From contig NIVC01005236.1 of the NCBI GenBank assembly GCA_002269645.1, positions 1 to 19,283 of the forward strand: DNA of 19,283 nt, written 5' to 3'. The stretch comes from Macrostomum lignano (lineage: Eukaryota). Of this stretch, positions 1 through 19,050 are shown in pieces; positions within the stretch are counted from its first letter, which is position 1; every line of letters starts with the position of its first letter. The translations under genes and the position numbers were made by a program. The notes below the pieces were generated by a model that saw nothing but the letters and a program-made list of their open reading frames with translations, had not been told where the DNA came from and searched no databases.

Positions 1-647
1 CTCTCTCGCGACCGTATAAAATTGGCACGATCGATAATTTTAAGTTCTCTCGCCAGCCAATGAAATCACTCGTGCTCGCGCTACCCCCCTCTGCGCTCTT
101 TTATTAAACCCCCCGCCGCGGCGGGCACCCCTCACCGCCCTTTTTCGTCTCTCCCCGCTTGTCCCTTGTTTCCTTCCCTGCGGCCTCTTAGCTGTCTTAT
201 CTGTTTGTCTGGCTGCCTCGAGCCTCCTTATTTCTCACCACGGCCCTTCTGTCTGGGCCAGCCTGCTCACACACTTACTTGACTGTTTCACGCCACGACC
301 GACGCCTACTCACCACTACGTTTCACTGCCTTCACGGTGCTCATAGCCACTGCTCACGTCACGTCGCCATTGTGTCATTCGCCTGCCACTTGACTTCATA
401 TCCAAATTATATTCAACCCATTGCTGCAGCCGCCAGTGCCCAGAAAGCTATAGTCTGTTTATTGCCAGTAACAACCAAACTTAATACTGATATTAACAAT
501 AAAGACAACTACGGCAGTTCCTGCCTTTATCGCCAAGTGCTCCGCTACAAAATCCGCTTTACAAGAATTGACTTCAACTTATTTTGGGACTAAAACGGCC
601 CTTTTAAGGGTCACCGCATAGCTGGCCGCTACGCCAATAACGTGACA
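1..647 (+). repeat. 5' LTR of element 1 (truncated by window start)
   Basis: Matches 9515-10160 except gcgg/tggcg near 118, two 1-nt indels (~137, ~430) and T/C at ~585. Ends AACGTGACA. TATAAAA at 15-21, AATAAA at 498-503. Confidence 0.96.
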
Positions 648-653
648 TAATTT

Positions 654-673
654 TGGAGGTCCCACCGAGACTC
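654..673 (+). promoter_or_regulatory. Primer binding site complementary to the tRNA-Gln 3' end
   Basis: TGGAGGTCCCACCGAGA(CTC) starts 6 nt after the LTR end; it is the reverse complement of the animal tRNA-Gln 3' end (...TCTCGGTGGGACCT-CCA), recalled. Confidence 0.85.
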
Positions 674-930
674 CTACTCAGCACTGCCGGCTCGCAACTA
701 AGTCAGCACCACCGAGACTCCTACTCAGCACTGCCGGCTCGCAACTAAGTCAGCACCACCGAGACTCCTACTCAGCACTGCCGGCTCGCAACTAAGTCAG
801 TGCCATCAAGACTTCTGCTCAGCCCTGCCAGCTCGTAATCAGCGCCATCAAGACTTCTGCTCAGCCCTGCCAGCTCGCAACCAAGCGTCAGCAAGATTCT
901 GCTCAGCTCTGCCGGCTCGTGACTGAGTGC
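662..930 (+). repeat. Leader tandem array, ~47-bp unit; 3 near-identical plus 3 diverged copies
   Basis: CCACCGAGACTCCTACTCAGCACTGCCGGCTCGCAACTAAGTCAGCA at 662, 709 and 756; diverged CCATCAAGACTTCTGCTCAGCCCTGCCAGCTCG copies at 803 and 845; a partial copy at ~892. Confidence 0.9.
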
Positions 931-948
931 CGGCCTGCCACGTTTCTG

Positions 949-1031
949 CCTGACGGTCCGCAAGGCTGCGAGAGCCTGTGCCACGCCTGAGGTTCGGTCC
1001 GCAAGGCTACGAGAGCCTGTGCCACGTCAGG
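949..1031 (+). repeat. Two-copy leader repeat enclosed by a 7-bp inverted repeat
   Basis: CGGTCCGCAAGGCTRCGAGAGCCTGTGCCACG twice; CCTGACG (949-955) is complementary to CGTCAGG (1025-1031); internal AGGCT/AGCCT stems. Confidence 0.7.
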
Positions 1032-1416
1032 CCCAGGGGTCCTGACTGCTCGGCCGGTCTTCGCTCGTCGCCGCGAGTCGTCGCTGGTCGTCGCCCTGAG
1101 CAACGCGCGCTGTCAACTGCGTTGAGCTCGAGCTTACGCTCTGCCAAGATAGCTCCGCTGCGTGTGCCAAGCCACGCCAGGTTACGCTGTGCGCTGATTG
1201 TTTGTAGGGACTATTGCCTGACAGTTAGTCTGGGTGGTTTGCGTGATAGGACTCTCCCCTATTATAGGCTTTTTGCGGTTTGCCCCTGTCAGGCACGTAT
1301 TTTGTTAGTAGGACGCAATCTCTCTCGTCTCTCTCGCGTCATCAACCTCAATTCGTTTTCTCTGGAGCCTTATTTTCGTTCACGCTTGATTCATTTGTCT
1401 CACTCAACCTTACACA

Positions 1417-2436
1417 ATGTCCGACAACGGGGACAACCATGCCGCAGCGTCATTGGCTGACGGAGATGCCGCCGTGCCAGATCAGGACGCAGTCGATGCC
1501 GGCGAGCAGCCAGCAGGCGCAGCTGCTGCCGCCGCGCCAGCTCCTAGTGAGCAACTCTTGTTGACTCAAACCTTAGCCTCTCTTCACCGGATGCTCGAAG
1601 AGCGTCTCGCTGTTTCCTCGCCATTAGCGCCAAATTCCTCGCCGCCTGCGAAGCCAGACATACGCCTTCGCCCTCCAATCGCTTATCAGCCGAAGATGAA
1701 CTTTGATACGTGGGAAGCTCAGCTTACTTCGTATCTAGCCACTTGCCGCGTTCCTGAGGACCAGAAGTCCGCCATTCTCGTATCTTTGCTGTCAGCCGAA
1801 TGCCAAGAGGTATATCTTAATTACCGGTGTGACCAGTTGCCTTTCGAATCTGCGCTTCGGCTGCTCAGGGAAAGGTACACCGATGCCAAGAAGAAGGACA
1901 AGGCCTACGTAGAATTAGTTGCTGCCGCCCAATCTCATAATGAGCAGATGTCTGATTTCTTCGACAGACTGGTCTCCTATTCTAGACTAGCGGGTCTCTC
2001 GCTCGCTGAAGCGAAGCCCCTACTCAAGGCCAGATTCTGCCATGGGCTGAGGGATAAGGACCTCGCCGAAAAGCTCCTCTTATGGGATCAGGAAACCGAC
2101 AGTGCCACCTCTGCAGAAGAGCTGATGCAGAAGGCCAAAGATCTTGTCGGGGTCCGCCAGCTTCTGAACGTGCCTTCTACTATAGCCAAGGTTCGTGCCA
2201 TAGAACCTGACGCTGAGAAGAAAGCGTTAGAACAGAGGGTCGCTGAGCTTGAGAAGATGGTGACCGACCAAGCCAATAGATTAAGCCAGACCACTCCGCC
2301 TGTCACTACCAATCAGGGCCCGCTCGCACAGAGCCCACTGGGGGCCCACCACAAGTTAGCCAAACCTATAGACAACCTAGGCCAGCTCCTCGCCCTCCGC
2401 GGGCTTGCCATCGATGCGGCCAGACCGATCACCTGA
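1417..2436 (+). CDS. gag: Gag (capsid) of element 1; the true frame switches to frame 3 between 2280 and 2405
   Basis: First ATG after the PBS; gypsy capsid-like motifs FDTWEAQLTSYL, SAILVSLL, MSDFFDRL, RFCHGLRD; coiled-coil near the end; the zinc knuckle continues in another frame. Confidence 0.85.
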   Translation: MSDNGDNHAAASLADGDAAVPDQDAVDAGEQPAGAAAAAAPAPSEQLLLTQTLASLHRMLEERLAVSSPLAPNSSPPAKPDIRLRPPIAYQPKMNFDTWEAQLTSYLATCRVPEDQKSAILVSLLSAECQEVYLNYRCDQLPFESALRLLRERYTDAKKKDKAYVELVAAAQSHNEQMSDFFDRLVSYSRLAGLSLAEAKPLLKARFCHGLRDKDLAEKLLLWDQETDSATSAEELMQKAKDLVGVRQLLNVPSTIAKVRAIEPDAEKKALEQRVAELEKMVTDQANRLSQTTPPVTTNQGPLAQSPLGAHHKLAKPIDNLGQLLALRGLAIDAARPIT

Positions 2437-3206
2437 TCGCTGACTGTCCATCGCCCTCGCCGAGGCCACAGTCGCCAAAGCAGCCCCGGGGGAGCCAAAA
2501 TCAGCAGCCCAGCCGTGGAAAAGTCACGACTGAACTAGGAACCATTGCCACATGGTCTCAGAATTACGGGTTCATCCAATCTGAGCACCTGCCAGAGAAA
2601 TTGTTCGTTCACATTAGCCAACTGTCTCCCAGCCTGCGTAGCCTAGTCGAGCAGCACCGCCTTAGGGGGACTAGGGTGAAATTCCAGCGCCAGGTCGACC
2701 CCGGGCGCCAGCACGACAAGGCCTGTAATGTGCAACCTCAGCCAGGGGACAGTGATCCACAATGCCGACAAGGGGGGTACACAGCTGACACCTTTGAGTC
2801 TAGCTATTTCGTGCAGCTAGGAGTAGGAGACTCTAAAGTTCTGGCCTGTCTAGACTCAGGCGCCAATGCCAGCATCATGGGTGCTGACGTGAAAGCCAAA
2901 CTGGTCGCAGCTGACCCCGTCAATAACATATTCACGCCTAGTGCCAATAAGCAGCGTGCCACCGCCTTCGGCGGCTCTCAGGTAGACATCCTAGGGTCGC
3001 TACGCTGCGAAATCAACTTAGGTAATACGACTAAACAACATGTATTCCTAGTCACTGCTTACTGTACCACGGAAGCCCTGTTAGGCATGGATTTCCTGCG
3101 CAGCTTCGAGATGCTGCTAGACTTCAACTCTGGCCGAGCTTTAGTAGCAGGGGTGTCGGTACCAGTCATTGAGGGGGACAAGGGGATTTTCCAACTCGAC
3201 GAGTGA
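2280..3206 (+). CDS. Frame-3 open segment: CCHC zinc knuckle, cold-shock domain and aspartic protease
   Basis: Open from 2280 to the stop at 3204-3206. CHRCGQTDHLIADC (2406-2447); CSD-like GTIATWSQNYGFI..LFVHISQL..RGTRVKF..ACNV (2538-2732); protease LDSGANAS (DSG at 2853-2861) and ALLGMDFL. Confidence 0.88.
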   Translation: MKPDHSACHYQSGPARTEPTGGPPQVSQTYRQPRPAPRPPRACHRCGQTDHLIADCPSPSPRPQSPKQPRGSQNQQPSRGKVTTELGTIATWSQNYGFIQSEHLPEKLFVHISQLSPSLRSLVEQHRLRGTRVKFQRQVDPGRQHDKACNVQPQPGDSDPQCRQGGYTADTFESSYFVQLGVGDSKVLACLDSGANASIMGADVKAKLVAADPVNNIFTPSANKQRATAFGGSQVDILGSLRCEINLGNTTKQHVFLVTAYCTTEALLGMDFLRSFEMLLDFNSGRALVAGVSVPVIEGDKGIFQLDE

Positions 3207-6200
3207 TGGCCGCCGGCACCGTAGAATTGCCCCCGCACTCGGAAACCTTGATCCCCAGTCGTGTCCTCGACTCTTCGCCGTACACCTCCGGTATAGTCAT
3301 GTCCCGGATCCTCGACCAGAGACCGAACAGTTGGTAGCCAAGACTCTAGACTCAGTTAGCGATACTAACCACATACTAGTGCGCGTGCTCAACAGTGGGG
3401 AACAGCCTATTCAGATAACTAGGGGGCAAGAAATTGCCTCATTCCAGGAATTAGATAGTCATGAGGTCATAGCTCAGACGACCCTGAAGGAGTCTGACTT
3501 TAGCCTGGACAATGTAGCTAACCTCACCAGCCAACTCAGTAAGCTGCCGCCGCCTAGTAGGGAGTTAGCCAAATGGCTGACAACGCAGTTCCAACTAGAC
3601 CAAGCCAAATTGTCTAGGGGCCAACTCGCCACCGTTTTGAAACTGCTCAACTACTTCAATAGCCAAATTTCTAGATCAAACGCAGATTTAGGCCACACCA
3701 ATTTACACGAGATGGGCATAGAGTTAATAGATCCTAAGGCCAAGCCTGTTGCGCAACCATACAGGCGCACCACGCCAGCACAAAAAGAATTCTTAGACCA
3801 GAACATAGCGCAGATGCTCGAACAGGGGGTCATTGAGGAGTGTGACTCTGACTGGGTGTCGCCTATCGTTCTGGTCAAGAAGAAGGACGGCACTCAACGC
3901 CTTTGCATAGACTATAGGGCCGTCAATAAGCTCATCAAGCCGTGTAGCTTCCCTCTGCCACTCATAGAAGAATCTTTTGACAGCCTTGCCGGGGCCACTG
4001 TATTCTCTAGCCTTGACCTGACCTCCGCGTACTGGCAGGTAGGGATCAAAGAGGAGGCTAGAGATTACACCGCCTTTGCCTGCCCCCAAGGCACCTTCCG
4101 CTGGAAGGTAGTACCATTCGGGATCAAGACGGCACCTGCCAATTTCGCGAAACTGATGCACAAGGTGTTTAGACCTCTCCTGATGAAGGTCAGCCTCATC
4201 TATTTAGACGACATTATCATTAAGGCTGTCAACAACGACCAAATGATCGCGCATCTCGCGCTGGTCCTCTGGCAGCTTAGAAAAGCCGGTCTCAAAATTA
4301 AGCCGTCTAAGTGTGAGCTGTTTAAGGACAAGGTCGCATTCCTGGGGTTCGTTGTGTCTAGCCGGGGCATTGAGGCTGACCCAGCGAAGACTCAGGCTGT
4401 CCAAGACTGGCCTAAACCGCTTTCTAAGAAACAGCTTCTATCATTCTTGGGATTTGCGAATTATTACCGGAAATTCGTGCCGCGATTCTCAATCATCGCC
4501 ACGCCTTTGTATGCCTTAGCCAAAAAGGATGCTCCGTTTCTATGGCAACCGCATCATGAACGGGCTTTCCAAGAACTCAAACATAGCCTCTGTTCACCAC
4601 CGATTCTGGCGTATCCAGACCTCTCTGCCAAAGGGCGCGAATTTATTTTGGACTGCGATAGCTCGCTTGACGGCACTGGGGGTGTGCTGTACCAGCTCGG
4701 GCCAGATGGCCAAGAGCAAGTTATAGCTTACGCATCCAAAAAATTCAACAGTAGCCAGAGAAACTACTGCGCCACCATGAGGGAGTTGCTAGGGCTCGTT
4801 CTGATGCTCGAGCATTTCCGTCCTTATCTATTAGACAAGCCTTTCACTGTCCGGGTGGACGCGGCCGCGCTCAAATGGCTGCATTCTAAGAAGCATGCCA
4901 CTGGTATGCTGGCCCAATGGCTTGCCACCATTGAACTGTACCCGCTGAAGGTCCAGCAGTCCACTCTAGAACGAATAGCCGAATACGATTTCACAGTCCA
5001 GTACCGTCCAGGCGTTGACCACGTGCCTGCTGACGCTCTTAGTAGACTGCCAAAATTCAGAGCCGATCACTTTGACTGCCCGACGTGCAGCCAGATTCCG
5101 GAATTTAAAGGGAAATTCCTGGACCAAGACCCAAAGCACCGGCGTACGCCCCCCTCTAGAGAACTGCGTCAGGTGTGCGTCCAGACCATAGGCATTAGCG
5201 TAGCGTGTCAGACTGACACAGATGCCCCGGCTGAACCAACGCCGAATGTCCGCGCTACTGCTAGCGGTGCTGTTCCTAGCCCAGAGACTGAATCCCGTCA
5301 ACCTGAAACCGAATCCCAAGTGCCACCTGAGCTCATCTGGGCCCAGAATGCCCAGGACTCCTGTGTTGACATGGCGCGCCTAATCGCCAGTGTCCAGTGT
5401 AAGACTGAGCCATTGTCCAAGGCCGAACTGCAGGGTTGTAGCCGGGAAATGCGCTCACTCTGGGCTCAATTCAATGACCTTGAAGTAGTCGAGGGTCTAT
5501 TGTACTTAGCCAAATCCTCCAAAGCCAAGACTGCCAACAGGCGCCTGGTGGTGCCTGAGACCGCAGACGTCGGTCATCTGGTCCTTCAGTATCATGGCCA
5601 GTTGAACCATTGCGGTATCACCAAGACGATGGCCGCCCTGAAGGCGCGCTTCGTTATTTCCGACTTAGATACTATAGTCAAGGGGGTCCTGGCCGAATGC
5701 ACCGTTTGCGCTAAGACTAAGAAGTCAAAGCGTAAGCTCAAGGCCCCTATGCAACCAGAACTGTCCGGCTACCCGAACCAGGTTGTCCACGTGGACCACG
5801 CAGGCCCGTTCGAAGAGTGTGACGGGTACAAGTACCTGCTGGTTATGATCGACAGGTTCACCGGGTTTGTTGAAGTAGTCCCTGTTCCCGACGTCAGCGC
5901 AGAGACCACTGCCACAACCATCCTGACTGAATGGGTTGCCAGGTATGGGGTGATGGAGCAGCTGGTGTCTGATAACGGAACTGCCTTCATCAATAGTACC
6001 ATGATAGAATTAACTAGGCTCCTACAGATTGACATGGGTCGGATCACAGCCCGTCGCCCTCAGGCTAACGGTAAAGCTGAGAGGATGATCCAGACGGTGA
6101 AAGCCCAGATTAGAGCCATCTGTCTTGAGAGACAATGCGACTGGCCCCTTGCCAGCCGCCTGGCCGCCCTGTCAATCCGTGCCACAGTCGCCGAATCCAC

Positions 6201-6327
6201 CGGATTTACTCCAGCCAAACTTTTCTTCGGGCGTGAGTTCGAACTACCGCTCGACCTCTGTCACAATCCACCGCCAAATGAACACTACCACCGGAGAGGT
6301 ACGCCCACCAGTTGCACCGCACGCTAG
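3169..6327 (+). CDS. pol: Pol: reverse transcriptase, RNase H, integrase (HHCC and DDE core)
   Basis: RT SPIVLVKKKDG, RLCIDYRAVN, VPFGI, YLDD (4201-4212); RNase H LDCDSS, NYCATMRELL, ADALSR; IN HGQLNHCG..CTVC, HVDHAGP, SDNGTAF, NGKAERMIQTVK. Confidence 0.97.
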   Translation: MRGTRGFSNSTSDGRRHRRIAPALGNLDPQSCPRLFAVHLRYSHVPDPRPETEQLVAKTLDSVSDTNHILVRVLNSGEQPIQITRGQEIASFQELDSHEVIAQTTLKESDFSLDNVANLTSQLSKLPPPSRELAKWLTTQFQLDQAKLSRGQLATVLKLLNYFNSQISRSNADLGHTNLHEMGIELIDPKAKPVAQPYRRTTPAQKEFLDQNIAQMLEQGVIEECDSDWVSPIVLVKKKDGTQRLCIDYRAVNKLIKPCSFPLPLIEESFDSLAGATVFSSLDLTSAYWQVGIKEEARDYTAFACPQGTFRWKVVPFGIKTAPANFAKLMHKVFRPLLMKVSLIYLDDIIIKAVNNDQMIAHLALVLWQLRKAGLKIKPSKCELFKDKVAFLGFVVSSRGIEADPAKTQAVQDWPKPLSKKQLLSFLGFANYYRKFVPRFSIIATPLYALAKKDAPFLWQPHHERAFQELKHSLCSPPILAYPDLSAKGREFILDCDSSLDGTGGVLYQLGPDGQEQVIAYASKKFNSSQRNYCATMRELLGLVLMLEHFRPYLLDKPFTVRVDAAALKWLHSKKHATGMLAQWLATIELYPLKVQQSTLERIAEYDFTVQYRPGVDHVPADALSRLPKFRADHFDCPTCSQIPEFKGKFLDQDPKHRRTPPSRELRQVCVQTIGISVACQTDTDAPAEPTPNVRATASGAVPSPETESRQPETESQVPPELIWAQNAQDSCVDMARLIASVQCKTEPLSKAELQGCSREMRSLWAQFNDLEVVEGLLYLAKSSKAKTANRRLVVPETADVGHLVLQYHGQLNHCGITKTMAALKARFVISDLDTIVKGVLAECTVCAKTKKSKRKLKAPMQPELSGYPNQVVHVDHAGPFEECDGYKYLLVMIDRFTGFVEVVPVPDVSAETTATTILTEWVARYGVMEQLVSDNGTAFINSTMIELTRLLQIDMGRITARRPQANGKAERMIQTVKAQIRAICLERQCDWPLASRLAALSIRATVAESTGFTPAKLFFGREFELPLDLCHNPPPNEHYHRRGTPTSCTAR
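3182..3337 (+). CDS. Frame-2 bridge of the PR-RT linker (missed by the ORF track)
   Basis: Reads GDFPTRRVMAAGTVELPPHSETLIPSRVLDSSPYTSGIV, resembling the usual gypsy post-protease linker; joins frame 3 to frame 1 if one G (3182-3185) and one C (3303-3305) are added. Confidence 0.7.
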   Translation, partial: GDFPTRRVMAAGTVELPPHSETLIPSRVLDSSPYTSGIVMSRILDQRPNSW

Positions 6328-7178
6328 TCGAAACCTCTGCCCTAGCCCGCCGCACTAGGGGTAAAGCCCAGGAGAGGCAGAAAAGGTATTACGACCGCCG
6401 CGCCCTCCGCGCTGAGTTCCACGAGGGAGAGTTAGTCTGGGTCTTGAACCCGAACCACAAGGGCATAGAACCCGCTGTGTGGTTGGGGCCATACCGAGTA
6501 GTGCAGCGCTGCTCCGAGCGGACTTACCGTTTAGTCCCCGAGTATGGTCTCCTAAACCCAGCAGATCGGGTGCCAAATCCGCGCCATAACATTTACAACA
6601 TTGACCGCCTCAAACCGTGCATCAGACAGCCCACTTACCAAGACGTAGTTGACCGGTATGGTGAGGCCACCCATGCCAGGTCTCCAGCGCCTAGTGTGAA
6701 CCCGCCCAGCGGACCCGCGAGCGAGCTTAGCCTCGTCACCATTCCCCAGCCTTCCTCTGCCCGGCCAGAGAGCCCACGCAGAGCGCCAGGGCCAAATCCA
6801 CCACCGCCAGCTTCAGGCGCCTTTGAGGAGGGGGCGGGAGCTGAAGCGGGAGAAGGCCAACCATTCGCCGAAGCTGGCGATGCTGTAGCTATTGAGGGAC
6901 AGCCACAACCAGACACTGACACTGACAGCACAGACACTGACACCAGCCACAGCCAAGACAGCTCAGAGTCGCTGTACACGGCTTCCTTGGGGGACCCTTC
7001 CTCCGAGCAATTAGAACCACCTGAGATTGCTGCGAATCCAGTCGCTGCGCAAGCAGCTGAGCCACCAGCCCCGGCTGACGTACCCAGATCCAGGTACGGA
7101 CGCCCCATCCGCCCGCCTGTCAGGTACCGGACCTGTCAAGTGTCCGACCTGCTCCAGCAGTGGGGAAGCAGACACTAA
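6288..7178 (+). CDS. Integrase C-terminus (GPY/F region) with an acidic/Pro-rich tail
   Basis: ERYAHQLHRTL..QKRYYDRR..FHEGELVWV..WLGPYRVV..YNIDRLKP; tail ends RSRYGRPIRPPVRY; in frame with pol if one C is added at 6291-6292. No chromodomain seen. Confidence 0.88.
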   Translation, partial: PPERYAHQLHRTLVETSALARRTRGKAQERQKRYYDRRALRAEFHEGELVWVLNPNHKGIEPAVWLGPYRVVQRCSERTYRLVPEYGLLNPADRVPNPRHNIYNIDRLKPCIRQPTYQDVVDRYGEATHARSPAPSVNPPSGPASELSLVTIPQPSSARPESPRRAPGPNPPPPASGAFEEGAGAEAGEGQPFAEAGDAVAIEGQPQPDTDTDSTDTDTSHSQDSSESLYTASLGDPSSEQLEPPEIAANPVAAQAAEPPAPADVPRSRYGRPIRPPVRYRTCQVSDLLQQWGSRH

Positions 7179-7186
7179 CCGCCAGT

Positions 7187-7513
7187 TTTTCACGCCCCGG
7201 GCAAGGCGTAAAACTACCTCCTGTGGCACCTGTCAGCCACAGGTCTCTGCGGCACCTGTAGACCGCAAGTTCACGCCCCGGGCAAGGCGTAAAACTACCT
7301 CCTGTGGCACCTGTCAGCCACAGGTCTCTGCGGCACCTGTAGACCGCAAGCTCACGCCCCGGGCAAGGCGTAAAACTACCTCCTGTGGCACCTGTCAGCC
7401 ACAGGTCTCTGCGGCACCTGTAGACCGCAAGCTCACGCCCGGGCAAGGCGTTAAACTACCTCCTGTGGCACCTGTTGGTCACAGGTCCCTGCGGCATCTG
7501 CCAGCCGCAAGCC
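7187..7513 (+). repeat. 3' UTR tandem array, 81-bp unit, 4 copies, three stem-loops per unit
   Basis: Units start at 7191, 7272, 7353 and 7434 (4th diverged). Stems ACGCC/GGCGT, CCTGTGGC/GCCACAGG and TGCGG/CCGCA. Confidence 0.92.
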
Positions 7514-7586
7514 ACAAAACACAAGCCACAGCTGTTACTCACTGCCAGATACTAGTGTGCACAACTTCCACAGCTGTACCAGCCAA

Positions 7587-8163
7587 CAGCCAACCACCGT
7601 AGTCAAGGGGATAAACTGCGGCGACATTGCAATTTGATAATTTATATAGCTAACTAAAATAAATAAAATAAAAATAAAACGCACTAGCAGAATTAGCATA
7701 ATATGCCGACAGTATAAATACTATATTGTTCTAACGCAAGAATATATATAATATCGCAGCACCCAACTCCGACTGCACCTGGTCGGCGTTGCCGTAGTCT
7801 ATAGAATACACTACGGCGCTAGAAACAAATAGTAGATAAGACATTAGCCTTAGCTCAAATATTCAAAAGTAAACTAAAAAATTAATGCATAAATATGGCA
7901 TAAAATAATGCATATATTGGTCGAAAAATGAGTTACGAGATGAATACTATAAATATAATAGTTGTCAAAATATTCTGTAGACGTCCTCTGCCTGCATCGG
8001 CGTTGCCATAATCGATAAAATACACTAGGGCACGTATAAACATTATAGCAATGGCAAAAATGATTAAAATAATTGATAGCAATGGCACCCGTTCGGTGTT
8101 GCCAAAGTCGATGAAATGAATAAGTGCGTCATCTCTGACGCTAATAGTAATACCCCGAAACCA
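7587..8163 (-). pseudogene. Four Tudor-domain-like coding fragments, antisense to element 1, separated by AT-rich spacers
   Basis: Minus-strand translations: WFRGITISVRDDALIHFIDFGNTERVPLLSI (8071-8163); RALVYFIDYGNAD (7996-8034); SAVVYSIDYGNADQVQSEL (7764-7820); NVAAVYPLDYGGW (7590-7628). They match the recalled Tudor core W(Y/F)R(A/G)...V.(F/Y)(I/V)D(Y/F)GN.E.V. Confidence 0.72.
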
Positions 8164-8506
8164 TGTAATGTGCAATATACGGTTAGTAATTAAAGCATAA
8201 CTACTGGCGACTAGTGAAACGCATAAATAACTCAAAAAGGAAAATAAAAACTGAAAAAAGCAACCATTGAAAACTCGAAAAAATGCATATAGGAACATAG
8301 CTAGCTCAGTGCAGCGCGACCCTGTCAGCTCATTGACGAGTGCAGCGTAACGCTGCGCAGCTGGCTGATCAGGTCAGCGTCGTTACTTCAAAAATCAACT
8401 GCAATTGATCATTAAATTTCGCAAATTCCATAAACACTAGTAGATATAATACTTGTGGGGTAAAAGTAAGCACTACACACACACACACCGCACCGCACGC
8501 ACGCTC

Positions 8507-8845
8507 TCTCTGCCTTTGGCGCGTAGCGCCGTCCTCCGCCTGGCGCGCTGCGCGTCCTCTGCCTTTGGCGCGTAGCGCCGTCCTCTGCCTTTGGCGCGTA
8601 GCGCCATCCTCTGCTTTGGCGCGTAGCGCCATCCTCTGCCTTGGCGCGTAGCGCCATCCTCTGCCTGGCGCGTGGCGCCGTTCTCTGCCTTGGCGCGTGG
8701 CGCCGTTCTCCTGCCTTGGCGCGCTGCGCCGTTTCCTGCCTTGGCGCGCTGCGCCGTTCTTTGCCTTGGCGCGCTGCGCCGTGTCTCCGCCTTGGGCGCT
8801 CTTGCGCCGGTTTCTCCCTTCCGCCTTGGCGCGCCGCGCCGTGTC
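8507..8845. repeat. GC-rich ~25-bp minisatellite, 13 copies, each a GGCGC-NNN-GCGCC hairpin
   Basis: Consensus CTCTGCCTTGGCGCGTAGCGCCRTC. The stem is intact in 11 of 13 copies; loops are gta/gtg/gct/gcc. Confidence 0.9.
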
Positions 8846-9318
8846 CCGCCGCCCTTGACGCTTGGCGTCGTTTGCCCGCAGTTGTCCGGACTGTGCCTCT
8901 GTTCCGTGCCTCTGCTCTGCATCCTTTGCCTCATCCACCTTGTCATCCTTGTTCTGTGTTTGCCTCATCCATCGTATCACTTCTGCGCGTCCTTTGTCGT
9001 TTTTGTGTTCGCGCGCCGCGCCGCTCCGTCGTGCACTACTTTCCGTAACCATTGTTGTATTTTGTAATGTTTTTGTAACACCACCATGTTGTATTGCTCG
9101 TGCTCACCGTGTTCTACTGCCCTGTAATGTTCTGCTCTCGTAATAGTCTGTAGCCTTTGGAACTTTGTAATTTTGTCCGGTAATCATATGCTCATACAAA
9201 CTGACTCAACCCCACTGTAATTCACTCTGCTATAATTTCATAAACTGCGGTCACGTTGTGTTTTTCTTGCCGTCACCCCGCGTGTTGGTTTTCTTTTTGC
9301 GCGACCCTATCCTTTTTC

Positions 9319-9332
9319 GGAAGGGAGGCGGG
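9319..9332 (+). promoter_or_regulatory. Polypurine tract of element 1
   Basis: GGAAGGGAGGCGGG immediately before TGTGACGTT. Confidence 0.88.
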
Positions 9333-10160
9333 TGTGACGTTGTCAGTTTAAGGTGGTCCCGAAAAGGGCCGTTGGACTGCTGTTCTCCATAGTCATTCAA
9401 CCCTTCAGTTTCACCGTTTCAACTAAACTTTTCCATTCGTTTATTGCGACGTTTACTTGTAGTAGTGCCCAACGATTTTGTGGCAATTTCTAATTCACTG
9501 TATATTTTGCTATCCTCTCTCGCGACCGTATAAAATTGGCACGATCGATAATTTTAAGTTCTCTCGCCAGCCAATGAAATCACTCGTGCTCGCGCTACCC
9601 CCCTCTGCGCTCTTTTATTAAACCCCCCGCCTGGCGCGGGCACCCCTCACCCCCTTTTTCGTCTCTCCCCGCTTGTCCCTTGTTTCCTTCCCTGCGGCCT
9701 CTTAGCTGTCTTATCTGTTTGTCTGGCTGCCTCGAGCCTCCTTATTTCTCACCACGGCCCTTCTGTCTGGGCCAGCCTGCTCACACACTTACTTGACTGT
9801 TTCACGCCACGACCGACGCCTACTCACCACTACGTTTCACTGCCTTCACGGTGCTCATAGCCACTGCTCACGTCACGTCGCCATTGTGTCATTCGCCTGC
9901 CACTTGACTTCATATCCAAATTATATTCAACCCATTGCTGCAGCGCCAGTGCCCAGAAAGCTATAGTCTGTTTATTGCCAGTAACAACCAAACTTAATAC
10001 TGATATTAACAATAAAGACAACTACGGCAGTTCCTGCCTTTATCGCCAAGTGCTCCGCTACAAAATCCGCTTTACAAGAATTGACTTCAACTTATTTCGG
10101 GACTAAAACGGCCCTTTTAAGGGTCACCGCATAGCTGGCCGCTACGCCAATAACGTGACA
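9333..10160 (+). repeat. 3' LTR of element 1 (828 bp)
   Basis: TGTGACGTT...AACGTGACA termini (TG..CA, 8/9 inverted match); TATAAAA at 9529-9535, AATAAA at 10011-10016. Confidence 0.95.
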
Positions 10161-12395: not shown

Positions 12396-13814
12396 GAACC
12401 CGGGGGCTCTTCAGCGCGTGGAAGGAGGAGGCATCAGAGCTTGCGCGCGCAGCTGGGCGAGCCTCTCCTGCCTCTCCCTGGTAGCCTCGTCTAACATATC
12501 TCTGCCCCACTCCTCTAAATCTTGCCTATGGCGATCAGGTGGCGCACGAAGCTGCAATTGCTGCTGCTGCACACCCGGCGCCGGCGGCGTGGGCGCCTCC
12601 TGAATTGCAAGCGGCGGGGGCTGGGTTGGCGCCAGTTCCTACTGCTATTAGAGCCGCCCTGCCCCTGCCTCCAGTTCCTGTTGGGAGTGGCGGGGCGAGG
12701 GGGCCTCATCTGCTGGGGCAGCTGGCAACAGACTCTGCTGTCGCCTTCATAGTTTCATTGAGCTGCACCAGCTGGTTGCGCAGATCCTTTTGCGTTTGCT
12801 CTAGCGCGCCCAACCTCTCTTGCATCTCTGATAGGCCGTCACCGTCCTCCTCCGTCTCGTCAGCTTCCTGGTTCACCATCCTGACCCACTTGCGAGGGGC
12901 CTGGGTGGCTGCTGAGGTTGCAGACGGACTTCGGTGCGGGACTCAGACCTGGGCGGGCCACTACTGTCCCATTTCCCGGCTAAGTCTGCGGCTTCTAACA
13001 GGGCTTGCTGCTGTTCTAACACCTGCTCAATTGTCTGCCAGCGACGGCTCAACAGATCTTGTCTGACCTGGCGGGGGAGCTTAGCGTGTTCCAAGTAGGT
13101 GTACACGATTCTTGTTCTCTCTGCTCACCCTGAATCTGAGGAAACATGGCCGTTATCTGAGATCTTATCATAGCAGCAAAAGCACTATGTGATTGGCCGG
13201 GTTTCTGGCTCAGATTCTTCAGCTTATTTCTCTTAGCCAGATCAGTGTTGGCCTCGCCCAACTGCTCTCCTAATCTAGATACGAACTGCTCAAAGGGCAA
13301 TTGCCCGTCCAATCCTAAGGCTAAGTTCTGAAATTCACCTGGGAGGTGCGAGATGAGCACCTGCTTCCTAGCCTGATCTCCTACAGTTCTCTCCGCGTCC
13401 AGCTTGTAGATCATTCTCTCTACCCATTGCACAAAACAGTGTTCGCCGGGAGAGAACTTTTCTACGTAGATTTTCGGCCTCTGGGCGTCTTGGCCCATGT
13501 TTAGCTGGTTAAACGCATTGGCTATAGCGGCAACTAAGTCTCCTAGCTGCGGGACTGCCTGAGGAGGATTCTGGGCTGCGTCCGGGAGCAGCGGCGGCTG
13601 CTGCGTCACCCTGATTGGGAGCGGGAGCTGCTACTCCTTCATCTGGTTCCTCAACTACTACTGCTTCTGGAGGCTGAGGGACCTGGTTACCAGCGGCTGC
13701 GGCCATTGCGGCTGCGGGGGCGGCAACTGCTGGGGTGTCAGCGGCCGAGGGTGGTTGACCAGGGGCGTCTGCGCACACAGCTTCTACGACCCTATCTCCA
13801 CGCGCCCGTGACAT
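12375..13814 (-). pseudogene. gag: Gag of element 2 (several frameshifts)
   Basis: ATG at 13814 (MSRARGDRVV..); capsid-like VEKFSPGEHCFVQWVERM, VLISHL, KLKNLSQKPGQSHSAFAAMIR; coiled-coil LSEMQERLGALEQTQKDLRNQL; no CCHC knuckle seen. Confidence 0.8.
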
Positions 13815-18358: not shown

Positions 18359-19050
18359 ATACAGGACAACTCTCTTTTGAAGGATTGTACATGTACAGGA
18401 CAATCTCTTTTGAAGGGTTTTACATGTACAGGACAACTCTCTTTTGAAAGGTTTTACATGTACAGGACAACTCTCTTTGAAGGGTTTTACATGTACAGGA
18501 CAACTCTCTTTTGAAGGATTGTACATGTACAGGACAACTCTCTTTTGAAGGATTGTACATGTACATCACAACTCGGTTTGAAGGGTTGTACATGTACAGG
18601 ACAACTCTCTTTTGAAGGATTGTACATGTACAGGACAACTCTCTTTTGAAGGGTCGTACATGTACATCACAACTCGGTTTTGAAGGGTTGTACATGTACA
18701 GGACAACTCTCTTTTGAAGGTTTTAAATGTACAGGACAACTCTCTTTTGAAGGGTTGTACATGTACAGGACAACTCTCTTTTGAAGGGTTGTACATGTAC
18801 AGGCAATCCTCTTAAAGGGCTGTACATGTACAGAACAACTCTCTTTTGAAGGGTCGTACATGTACAGGACAACTCATTTTTGAATGATCGTACATGTACA
18901 GGACAATCCTTTGAAGGGCTGTACATGTACAGGACAACTCGGTTTTGAAGGGTTGTGCCAGTATATGTACAGGACAACTCTTTTTTTAAAGGGCTGTACG
19001 CGTACAGGACAATTGGTTGAAGGGTTGTACATGTACAGGACAATTCTTTG
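18359..19050. repeat. 34-bp minisatellite, ~20 copies, with the palindrome TGTACATGTACA
   Basis: Consensus TTGAAGGGTTGTACATGTACAGGACAACTCTCTT; period 34 (e.g. 18361 to 18395). Confidence 0.95.

What the first reader, a model, noticed from the sequence alone, without database searches (positions are those of the whole stretch)
7587..8163. Retrotransposon 3' region carries an array of antisense Tudor-domain (DYGN) fragments: a candidate anti-piRNA-pathway cassette
SEEN: between pol and the PPT, four GC-richer islands in A-rich spacers translate on the minus strand to the same Tudor core: A-L-I-H-F-I-D-F-G-N-T-E, A-L-V-Y-F-I-D-Y-G-N-A-D, A-V-V-Y-S-I-D-Y-G-N-A-D and A-A-V-Y-P-L-D-Y-G-G-W. The first also carries the upstream W-F-R-G strand. 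Over this core, islands 2 and 3 differ by 4 synonymous third-position changes (ATC/ATA, GAT/GAC, TAT/TAC, GAT/GAC) and only 2 replacements, and islands 1 and 2 differ mostly by synonymous or conservative changes. This indicates origin from protein-coding sequence in this frame. Stops and a frame offset between islands (D-to-D spacings 96, 214, 195 nt) rule out one continuous ORF. KNOWN: Tudor proteins (Tudor, Qin, Krimper, Tejas, Papi, TDRDs) are core piRNA-pathway factors and DYGN is the most conserved part of the domain. Drosophila TART-A captured a fragment of the piRNA gene nxf2 and produces piRNAs against it. INFERENCE: the element's sense RNA is antisense to Tudor mRNAs, so small RNAs cut from it could silence several host Tudor genes at once. 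That would be a multi-target counter-defence array in an LTR element.
Basis: partly seen in the sequence, partly recalled or inferred. Interest (0 to 1): 0.88.

Follow-up and report, generated by a model that had tools for sequence, protein, structure and literature searches.

The report
Antisense Tudor-fragment array in a retrotransposon
A recently inserted flatworm-type LTR retrotransposon carries, backwards in its 3' untranslated region, four short non-coding pieces of Tudor-domain coding sequence; Tudor proteins scaffold the piRNA defence against transposons, so this may be a captured-gene counter-defence, but that function is untested.

Summary
On the minus strand at 7582-8163 there are exactly four related 45-90 nt islands (GC 48-55%). 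They sit in unrelated spacers of 26-28% GC that are A-rich on the plus strand. The islands translate to the beta-strand/DYGN core of an extended Tudor domain.

Island 1 (TWFRG...FIDFGNTERVPL) is clearly Tudor. A phmmer search of 1.84 billion proteins returned 312 hits; the named ones are multi-Tudor piRNA-pathway proteins (TDRD6, Tudor-like, TDRD1/15). An independently seeded Tudor HMM scored island 1 at 27 bits (i-E 1e-7). Island 3 is significant, island 2 marginal. Island 4 is recognisable only as a DNA homologue.

The array lies between pol and the polypurine tract of a Ty3/gypsy element. Its LTRs are 99% identical and its closest relative is a Macrostomum lignano element (68% pol identity), which lacks the array.

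Variable sites among islands are enriched at third codon positions (p = 0.02). Homology stops sharply at the island edges.

The anti-piRNA reading is plausible. It matches the known capture and amplification of nxf2, piwi and aub fragments by Drosophila telomeric elements. It remains untested: I found no donor gene, no other family copies and no small-RNA data. A non-functional passenger is about equally likely.

The parts
1..647 (+). 5' LTR, cut off by the start of the window (about 182 nt are missing)
   Evidence: 642/648 identical to 9515-10160.
1417..2436 (+). gag (PNMA-like capsid)
   Evidence: Pfam PNMA at E 8e-6. 40% identical to residues 1-298 of M. lignano P0001.
2406..3206 (+). Aspartic protease, in a different frame from gag
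   Evidence: Pfam Asp_protease families. tblastn places it in frame 3, against frame 1 for gag.
3169..6327 (+). RT, RNase H and integrase (Ty3/gypsy order)
   Evidence: Pfam RVT_1, RT_RNaseH, Integrase_H2C2 and rve. 68% identical to the M. lignano protein.
6288..7178 (+). Integrase C-terminal part, frame-shifted relative to the integrase core
   Evidence: Pfam Integrase_p58_C, weak. tblastn places it in frame 3, 63% identical to P0001 residues 1674-1746.
7190..7512 (+). Tandem array, 81 bp x 4
7582..7628 (-). Island 4: AAVYPLDYGGW. A degenerate copy that overlaps the stop codon of the plus-strand ORF 7027-7602.
   Evidence: DNA profile E 2.5e-7. 21/27 identical to island 3. Tudor HMM score not significant.
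7629..8300 (.). AT-rich matrix (spacers 26-28% GC, A-rich on the plus strand) that holds islands 3, 2 and 1. It also contains five AATAAA hexamers on the plus strand.
   Evidence: No homology among the spacers.
7775..7821 (-). Island 3: SAVVYSIDYGNADQVQSEL
   Evidence: Tudor HMM 12.1 bits, E 0.006, profile positions 55-71. DNA profile E 3.4e-11.
7990..8034 (-). Island 2: RALVYFIDYGNAD
   Evidence: Tudor HMM 8.1 bits, i-E 0.1, profile positions 56-67. 30/35 identical to island 3.
8080..8163 (-). Island 1: WFRGITISVRDDALIHFIDFGNTERVPL, the longest Tudor-core fragment
   Evidence: Pfam TUDOR profile positions 68-97. Own HMM 27.2 bits, i-E 1e-7. 15/29 ungapped identity to a Hydra TDRD6 domain. The best PDB hit is the TDRD1 extended Tudor domain.
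8508..8795 (.). GC-rich tandem array, 25 bp x 11.4, in the same 3' untranslated region
9319..9332 (+). Polypurine tract GGAAGGGAGGCGGG
   Evidence: Read directly from the sequence. It lies immediately 5' of the TG that starts the LTR.
9333..10160 (+). 3' LTR (TGTGACGTT...AACGTGACA). Its start is inferred from the PPT, the TG dinucleotide and the terminal inverted repeat.

Best explanation
A Ty3/gypsy LTR retrotransposon, probably of a Macrostomum-like flatworm, acquired coding sequence from a germline-type extended-Tudor gene. It now carries four short copies of the most conserved part of that domain (beta-strand plus DYGN) in its 3' untranslated region, in antisense orientation.

The copies are not translated as a domain. 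The element's full-length RNA is transcribed from LTR to LTR, so it contains these segments as antisense Tudor sequence. Sense-strand small RNAs processed from the element (piRNAs, for example ping-pong products, or siRNAs) would therefore be complementary to Tudor mRNAs. Such RNAs could lower the level of the scaffold proteins that assemble the piRNA machinery.

This is the same logic as the capture of nxf2, piwi and aub by Drosophila telomeric elements.

Shown here:
- the structure of the element
- the Tudor identity of the islands
- their antisense orientation
- that there are four copies
- that homology is confined to the cores
- the third-codon-position bias

Inferred only:
- that the sequence was captured from a host gene
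- that small RNAs are produced
- that Tudor mRNAs are targeted
- any selective benefit
For: - Tudor identity.
- Position between pol and the PPT of an element with 99% identical LTRs.
- Exactly four DNA-homologous cores, with flanks and spacers unrelated and very different in composition (26-28% GC against 48-55%). Simple tandem duplication followed by neutral drift would not give this. Islands 2 and 3 are 86% identical, yet their surroundings cannot be aligned.
- Variable sites among islands 1-3: 8 of 12 third codon positions against 6 of 24 first and second positions, p = 0.02.
- Precedent: TE capture of piRNA-pathway genes, with intra-element amplification, piRNAs against the host gene and faster evolution of the captured host region (PMC7785250; PMC13534243).
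- Macrostomum has PIWI proteins and piRNAs (PMC4604429, listed).
Against: - No donor was found. Word-based searches found nothing, though that index is sparse for short queries.
- The cores are short (45-90 nt) and 14-34% divergent from each other. In Drosophila, captured fragments below about 82% identity to the host gene gave almost no host-gene piRNAs.
- The nearest relative of the element lacks the array.
- Only one copy could be examined, and its gag-pol has at least four frame changes.
- The third-position test rests on 36 sites.
- Five AATAAA hexamers on the plus strand inside the AT-rich zone could truncate sense transcripts.
Confidence: 0.35

Rival explanations
1. Non-functional passenger. 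A piece of Tudor-gene sequence was picked up by template switching, read-through capture or DNA repair, either in the family or only in this copy. It was partly duplicated and is now decaying. The AT-rich low-complexity spacers turn over quickly by slippage and indels, so only the complex GC-richer cores remain recognisable. Occasional gene conversion between cores would slow their divergence.
For: - No continuous ORF. Islands 2 and 4 are trimmed or degenerate.
- Downstream of the DYGNAD core, islands 2 and 3 can be aligned by eye only with frame-breaking indels (sequences). This looks like non-coding drift.
- The spacers contain microsatellite-like runs and a 23-bp tandem repeat.
- The array is absent from the M. 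lignano relative.
- This copy has a broken gag-pol.
- No close donor was found.
Against: - Islands 2 and 3 are 86% identical, yet 48 nt of flank on either side show no homology beyond chance.
- No decayed intermediate copies were detected.
- The third-position bias suggests the copies diverged under coding constraint or were sampled from different paralogous domains.
- A random captured gene is unlikely to belong to the piRNA pathway. This is an argument from prior odds, not a tool result.
Confidence: 0.35
2. Cis-acting motif array. The roughly 36-nt GC-richer cores are binding sites for a host or element protein, or RNA elements, arranged in AT-rich spacers like the Su(Hw) site array of the Drosophila gypsy insulator. 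Candidates are a multi-zinc-finger factor on DNA, or an export or packaging factor on RNA. On this view the Tudor ancestry is incidental or has been exapted.
For: - The architecture is short conserved cores in unrelated AT-rich spacers.
- The element carries several other tandem motif arrays: 47 bp, 81 bp and 25 bp.
- Island 3 contains a perfect 8-bp hairpin and island 4 a 7-bp version of it with one G-U pair.
- From general knowledge, zinc-finger arrays read DNA in 3-nt steps. That could imitate a codon-like pattern of variation.
Against: - The hairpin is not conserved in islands 1 and 2, and fold z-scores are mostly unremarkable.
- No Rfam family matches.
- Island 1's Tudor match extends 17 codons beyond the shared core, so the sequence is primarily coding-derived.
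Confidence: 0.1
3. Antisense gene. The minus strand is transcribed and spliced into a small protein with repeated Tudor-core segments. Antisense placement would let its introns survive retrotransposition.
For: - A 146-codon open frame runs through islands 1 and 2. Only 11 of 2000 dinucleotide shuffles reach that length.
- In-frame, stop-free GT..AG joins exist for islands 2-to-3 and 3-to-4, with reasonable-looking sites such as TTTGTTTCTAG| and CAG|GTGCAG.
- No AATAAA occurs on the minus strand.
Against: - The number of possible joins is about what chance predicts (my rough estimate, not computed).
- No join links islands 1 and 2.
- The product would be four partial beta-strand fragments joined by Phe/Ile/Leu-rich filler. 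It could not form a Tudor barrel: only profile positions 43-74 of 119 are present.
- Apart from the sub-threshold TUDOR core match, the ORF has only sub-threshold chance Pfam matches.
Confidence: 0.04

Closest known systems
Capture of piRNA-pathway gene fragments by Drosophila telomeric non-LTR elements: TART-A/nxf2 (PMC7785250), and piwi and aub fragments in Drosophila and Zaprionus telomeric elements (PMC13534243)
   Same: - A fragment of a host piRNA-pathway gene sits in an untranslated part of a retrotransposon.
- The fragment is amplified to several copies within the element.
- It is absent from related elements.
- The proposed action is through element-derived small RNAs antisense to the host mRNA.
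   Different: - The element here is an LTR (Ty3/gypsy) element, probably in a flatworm, not a telomeric LINE in a fly.
- The fragments are much shorter (45-90 nt against 140-235 bp or about 700 bp).
- They are separated by unrelated AT-rich spacers.
- They cover only the most conserved motif of a domain family, not a unique gene region.
- Identity to a host gene, piRNAs and the host's evolutionary response are all unknown here.
Extended Tudor domains of germline scaffold proteins (Pfam PF00567: Tudor/TDRD6, TDRD1, TDRD15, Qin and others)
   Same: Island 1 aligns without gaps to the W-x-R-G ... [FY]-[IV]-D-[FY]-G-N-x-[ED]-x-V-P-L core, with 15/29 identity to a Hydra TDRD6 domain. The other islands keep the x-V-Y-x-I-D-Y-G-N part.
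   Different: - Only about a quarter of the domain is present.
- There is no intact ORF.
- The Pfam score is below the gathering threshold.
- It lies on the antisense strand of a transposon, so it is not a Tudor protein gene.
Ty3/gypsy LTR retrotransposon of Macrostomum lignano (BOX15_Mlig011200g1, contig NIVC01001096.1)
   Same: - Same gene order.
- About 68% amino-acid identity across RT, RNase H and integrase, 40% in gag and 51% in protease.
- The PBS region is similar, with a 33-nt match.
   Different: - The M. lignano element has a single 1791-codon gag-pol ORF.
- Its 3' region is short (about 1 kb) and cannot be aligned to this one.
- It has no DYGN motif in any frame.
AT-chX and Su(Ste)-type piRNA sources that derive from host gene fragments (vasa, Stellate) in Drosophila. 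This comparison is from memory; only a review, PMC7874207, was listed.
   Same: Repeated fragments of a germline gene serve as templates for antisense piRNAs against that gene.
   Different: Those are host genomic repeats that act for the host or in hybrid incompatibility. They are not cargo inside a mobile element.

Membership tests
Ty3/gypsy LTR retrotransposon | Direct long terminal repeats that begin with TG and end with CA | tested here: met
   642/648 identity between positions 1-647 and 9515-10160. The 3' LTR reads TGTGACGTT...AACGTGACA.
Ty3/gypsy LTR retrotransposon | Gene order gag, protease, RT, RNase H, integrase | tested here: met
   Pfam domains occur in this order. 68% identity to an M. 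lignano gag-pol. The reading frame changes at least four times in this copy.
Ty3/gypsy LTR retrotransposon | A polypurine tract next to the 3' LTR and a primer-binding site next to the 5' LTR | tested here: met
   The PPT GGAAGGGAGGCGGG lies at 9319-9332. A TGG-starting sequence lies 7 nt after the 5' LTR (the D5 rows; one search places the LTR end at 647). Its tRNA partner was not identified.
Ty3/gypsy LTR retrotransposon | Target-site duplication | not testable with these tools
   The 5' end of the element lies outside the window.
Tudor domain (Pfam PF00567) | Score at or above the Pfam gathering threshold over the domain | tested here: not met
   22.6 bits against a cut-off of 23. Only profile positions 68-97 of 121 are matched. 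Island 1 alone scores 17.8 bits, and islands 2-4 give no hit.
Tudor domain (Pfam PF00567) | Specific similarity to Tudor-domain proteins in an unbiased search | tested here: met
   312 hits at E <= 1e-3. The named hits are TDRD6, Tudor-like, TDRD1 and TDRD15. An independent HMM gives i-E 1e-7.
Tudor domain (Pfam PF00567) | An intact ORF that encodes a complete barrel | tested here: not met
   Stops and a frame shift separate the islands. No match to HMM positions 1-42 or 75-119 in any frame.
TE gene-capture anti-silencing cassette (TART-A/nxf2 type) | A fragment inside the TE that is homologous to a host piRNA-pathway gene | tested here: met
   Met at the level of the domain family only. The specific host gene is unknown.
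TE gene-capture anti-silencing cassette (TART-A/nxf2 type) | High nucleotide identity to the host gene (median about 90%; below about 82% it is ineffective) | not testable with these tools
   The host genome and transcriptome are not available. Thresholds are from PMC13534243.
TE gene-capture anti-silencing cassette (TART-A/nxf2 type) | TE-derived small RNAs antisense to the host transcript | not testable with these tools
   No small-RNA data. The orientation is right: the element's sense RNA is antisense to Tudor.
TE gene-capture anti-silencing cassette (TART-A/nxf2 type) | Fragment present in most or all copies of the TE family | tested here: inconclusive
   Only one copy is available. The nearest relative, at 68% pol identity, lacks it. 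No closer relatives turned up in metagenomes.
TE gene-capture anti-silencing cassette (TART-A/nxf2 type) | Amplification of the captured fragment within the element (seen in some members) | tested here: met
   Exactly four copies.
Binding-site array (gypsy-insulator-like) | A short conserved motif repeated in AT-rich spacers | tested here: met
Binding-site array (gypsy-insulator-like) | Conservation that is independent of any reading frame, and a known binding factor | tested here: inconclusive
   Variation is biased towards third codon positions (p = 0.02). No binding factor can be tested here.

The most novel reading that the evidence does not exclude
An LTR retrotransposon of a free-living flatworm maintains, under selection, an array of short antisense segments that copy the most conserved (DYGN) core of several host extended-Tudor domains. 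Small RNAs made from the element's own transcript would then knock down multiple piRNA-pathway scaffold genes together. This would be the first anti-piRNA gene capture outside Drosophila telomeric LINEs. It would also be the first aimed at a conserved domain that the host cannot easily mutate, rather than at a single gene.
Probability: 0.25. Interest if true: 0.85.

Novelty: new variant of a known kind. Interest (0 to 1): 0.6.

Why it matters
TE capture of piRNA-pathway gene fragments as a counter-defence has so far been documented only in Drosophila telomeric non-LTR elements.

A Tudor-core array in a young Ty3/gypsy element of a flatworm would extend the phenomenon in three ways:
- to another TE class
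- to another phylum, one in which PIWI/piRNA function also underlies stem-cell biology
- to a new type of target, a conserved domain shared by many scaffold proteins

It also gives a concrete cassette that can be tested with RNAi-tractable Macrostomum species.

If the array turns out to be a one-off passenger, it is still a clean example of host-exon capture by an animal LTR retrotransposon.

Tried and rejected
1. Conserved RNA hairpin. Islands 3 and 4 have 7-8 bp stems, but islands 1 and 2 do not, and shuffle z-scores are mostly unremarkable. No Rfam family matches.

2. Extra decayed copies that would reveal a roughly 100-nt tandem period. An nhmmer profile finds only the four islands.

3. 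Homology among spacers or among 48-nt flanks. None beyond dinucleotide-shuffle expectation. A GITIS/AIAIM extension of the island 1-2 similarity that I saw by eye did not survive this test.

4. Other parts of a Tudor domain nearby in any frame. None.

5. Donor gene.
- An alignment query found no candidates.
- A concatenated-island query found 6 candidates, none scoring.
- P0275 shares 'FIDFGNTE' with island 1 (four consecutive 5-mers) and belongs to the ~15-billion-protein collection that these searches draw on, yet was not retrieved. So these two negatives are weak.
- The exhaustive phmmer search found no near-identical segment among the sequences held from it.

6. Closer relatives of the element.
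- The pol search gives only the M. lignano relative; all other hits are at or below 47% identity.
- The metagenome scan gave 27-39% relatives.
- An exact look-up of the 121-aa ORF found nothing.

7. Splicing into a coherent protein. Possible joins are at about chance frequency, and the product would be meaningless.

8. APOBEC-like G-to-A origin of the A-rich spacers. G and C counts are equal (157 and 156), so there is no G depletion.

Full report
**Context.**
- The window carries a Ty3/gypsy LTR retrotransposon on the plus strand.
- The two LTR copies (1-647, cut by the window start, and 9515-10160) are 642/648 identical, so the insertion is young.
- The 3' LTR starts at 9333 (TGTGACGTT) and ends at 10160 (AACGTGACA). 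The polypurine tract GGAAGGGAGGCGGG at 9319-9332 lies immediately before it.
- Pfam finds a PNMA-like gag, an aspartic protease, and RT, RNase H and integrase, in that order.
- The closest protein in 5.8 billion is a Macrostomum lignano gag-pol: 67% identity, 68% over RT to integrase by tblastn. All other hits are at or below 47%.
- The host is therefore probably a macrostomid-like flatworm. This is an inference.
- Compared with the single 1791-codon ORF of the M. lignano element, this copy changes frame at least four times: near 2316-2406, near 3173-3197, near 3316 and near 6288. These are either real lesions or assembly indels.
- The 3' untranslated region (about 7180-9318) holds, in order:
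  - an 81-bp x 4 tandem array
  - the AT-rich zone that contains the finding
  - a GC-rich 25-bp x 11 array

**The observation.**
- The D[YF]G[NG] motif in its hydrophobic context occurs four times in the six-frame translation of the whole window, and all four are here.
- Cores are 48-55% GC and spacers 26-28% GC.
- A DNA profile built from the cores finds exactly four copies of 45-48 nt, with E from 3e-11 to 2.5e-7, and no weaker copies.
- Pairwise core identities are 86% (islands 2 and 3), 78% (3 and 4) and 66% (1 and 3).

**Is it Tudor?**
- Pfam TUDOR hits the ORF through islands 1 and 2 at E = 1.2e-4 and 22.6 bits, just under the cut-off of 23, on profile positions 68-97.
- phmmer of the 70-aa stretch against 1.84 billion representative proteins gives 312 hits at E <= 1e-3.
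  - The best hits are 2000-4500-residue proteins matched in 8-13 stretches.
  - The named ones are TDRD6 (Hydra), maternal Tudor-like, TDRD1 and TDRD15.
- Island 1 aligns without gaps to a Hydra TDRD6 domain, 15/29 identical, including the terminal V-P-L.
- The top PDB match is the mouse TDRD1 extended Tudor domain, though weakly, at E = 1.6.
- I built a Tudor HMM seeded from the Hydra domain (1565 domain instances) and ran it with filters off against all 943 six-frame segments of the window:

| Segment | Bits | E-value |
|---|---|---|
| Island 1 | 27.2 | i-E 1e-7 |
| Island 3 | 12.1 | E 0.006 |
| Island 2 | 8.1 | i-E 0.1 |
| Island 4 | 0.2 | not significant |
| Best unrelated segment | - | E 1.1 |

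- Only HMM positions 43-74 of 119 are represented. No other part of a Tudor domain is detectable nearby in any frame.
- The islands are therefore real fragments of extended-Tudor coding sequence. This is the type that binds methylated PIWI tails (established knowledge; the classification is in PMC12147562). They are not a Tudor gene.

**Anatomy that constrains the origin.**
- Homology among islands ends sharply. 48 nt on either side, and the whole spacers, show no similarity beyond dinucleotide shuffles.
- Islands 2 and 3 are 86% identical, so a plain tandem duplication of a roughly 200-nt unit followed by neutral drift does not explain the unalignable surroundings.
- Among islands 1-3, 8 of 12 third codon positions vary against 6 of 24 first and second positions (Fisher p = 0.02). 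Islands 2 and 3 differ by four synonymous and two replacement changes.
- This fits copies that diverged under coding constraint, or that were sampled from paralogous domains. The sample is small, though, and three of the synonymous changes are C/T transitions.
- After the DYGNAD core, islands 2 and 3 remain similar by eye only through frame-breaking indels. That part has drifted as non-coding DNA.
- Islands 1 and 2 share a 146-codon open frame that is unusual for this composition: only 11 of 2000 shuffles reach it.

**Alternatives examined.**
- A conserved RNA structure is not supported.
- A spliced antisense gene is formally possible for the island 2-to-3 and 3-to-4 steps, but the joins are about as frequent as chance predicts, and the product would be meaningless.
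- A protein-binding motif array cannot be excluded and fits the architecture. However, it does not explain island 1's 17-codon extension of Tudor similarity.

**Comparative evidence.**
- The M. lignano relative (locus L001) has an 8.3-kb LTR spacing and a short 3' region that cannot be aligned to this one. It has no DYGN motif in any frame.
- No closer relative exists in the protein database or in JGI metagenomes.
- The two word-indexed searches returned nothing. They demonstrably miss short matches, so they carry little weight.
Those criteria were a close host Tudor transcript, presence in other copies, and small RNAs.

**Comparison with what is known.**
- TART-A captured about 700 nt of nxf2 and produces piRNAs antisense to it (PMC7785250).
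- A 2026 survey found at least nine independent captures by Drosophila telomeric elements, eight of them of piRNA-pathway genes (nxf2, piwi, aub) (PMC13534243). In that survey:
  - Fragments were 140-235 bp long and 76-95% identical to the host gene.
  - They were amplified to as many as 8 copies per element.
  - piRNAs mapped to the host gene only when identity was high.
  - The captured host region evolved faster.
- The present case shares the logic, the amplification and the class of target.
- It differs in several respects:
  - element class (LTR element)
  - host phylum
  - fragment size
  - the unrelated AT-rich spacers
  - the fact that only the most conserved motif of a domain family is kept

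**Verdict.**
The Tudor origin, the antisense orientation and the non-coding array are real.
- The counter-defence function is a reasonable hypothesis with precedent. I rate it at about 0.35 as stated, and at about 0.25 in its strongest multi-target form.
- A non-functional passenger is roughly equally likely.

Noticed in passing
window 7190-7512: Four copies of an 81-bp repeat (95-99% identical), directly after the integrase region. They read as a 27-residue repeat in the plus-strand ORF 7027-7602. The stop codon of that ORF lies inside island 4.
   Followed up: partly
window 8508-8795: A GC-rich 25-bp tandem array, 11.4 copies, unit CTCTGCCTTGGCGCGTAGCGCCGTC, in the same 3' untranslated region. 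The period is not a multiple of 3. The overlapping minus-strand 227-aa ORF (8369-9052) has no Pfam match.
   Followed up: partly
window 662-920: A 47-bp tandem array of about 5 copies that starts inside the putative primer-binding site, in the 5' untranslated leader of the element.
   Followed up: no
window 7658-7678 and 8243: Five AATAAA hexamers on the plus strand, all inside the AT-rich zone. There are none in the rest of the internal region (648-7600 and 8471-9333) and none on the minus strand of the zone. They could act as premature polyadenylation sites for the element's sense RNA.
   Followed up: partly
window 7936-8373 (minus strand): A 146-codon stop-free frame in 38% GC sequence that runs through islands 1 and 2. 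Only 11 of 2000 dinucleotide shuffles reach that length. The translation is Phe/Ile/Leu-rich filler apart from the Tudor cores.
   Followed up: yes
window 7791-7817: Island 3 contains a perfect 8-bp inverted repeat, GCCGTAGT-N11-ACTACGGC. The minus-strand fold has z = -3.8. Island 4 keeps a 7-bp version with one G-U pair on the plus strand. Islands 1 and 2 do not have it.
   Followed up: yes
window 2316-2406, 3173-3197, 3316-3319 and 6288-6291: The gag-pol reading frame changes at these four places, whereas the M. lignano relative has a single ORF. This is despite 99% LTR identity. The cause is either inactivating indels or assembly errors.
   Followed up: partly
window 13049-13609 (minus strand): A gag-like ORF with a weak PNMA match (E 0.018) downstream of the element. 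It is probably a remnant of another retrotransposon, so the neighbourhood is rich in TEs.
   Followed up: no
window 18360-19047: A 34-bp satellite of about 20 copies, unit TACAGGACAACTCTCTTTTGAAGGGTTGTACATG, which contains the palindrome TGTACATGTACA.
   Followed up: no
L001 17791-19674 and 20897-22956: The M. lignano locus has two 176-bp satellite arrays of 10-11 copies (98-100% identical) just downstream of the related element.
   Followed up: no
window 9329-9375 (minus strand): A sub-threshold Rfam match to the histone 3' UTR stem-loop (19 bits against a gathering score of 34, E 0.07), straddling the PPT/LTR junction. Probably chance.
   Followed up: no
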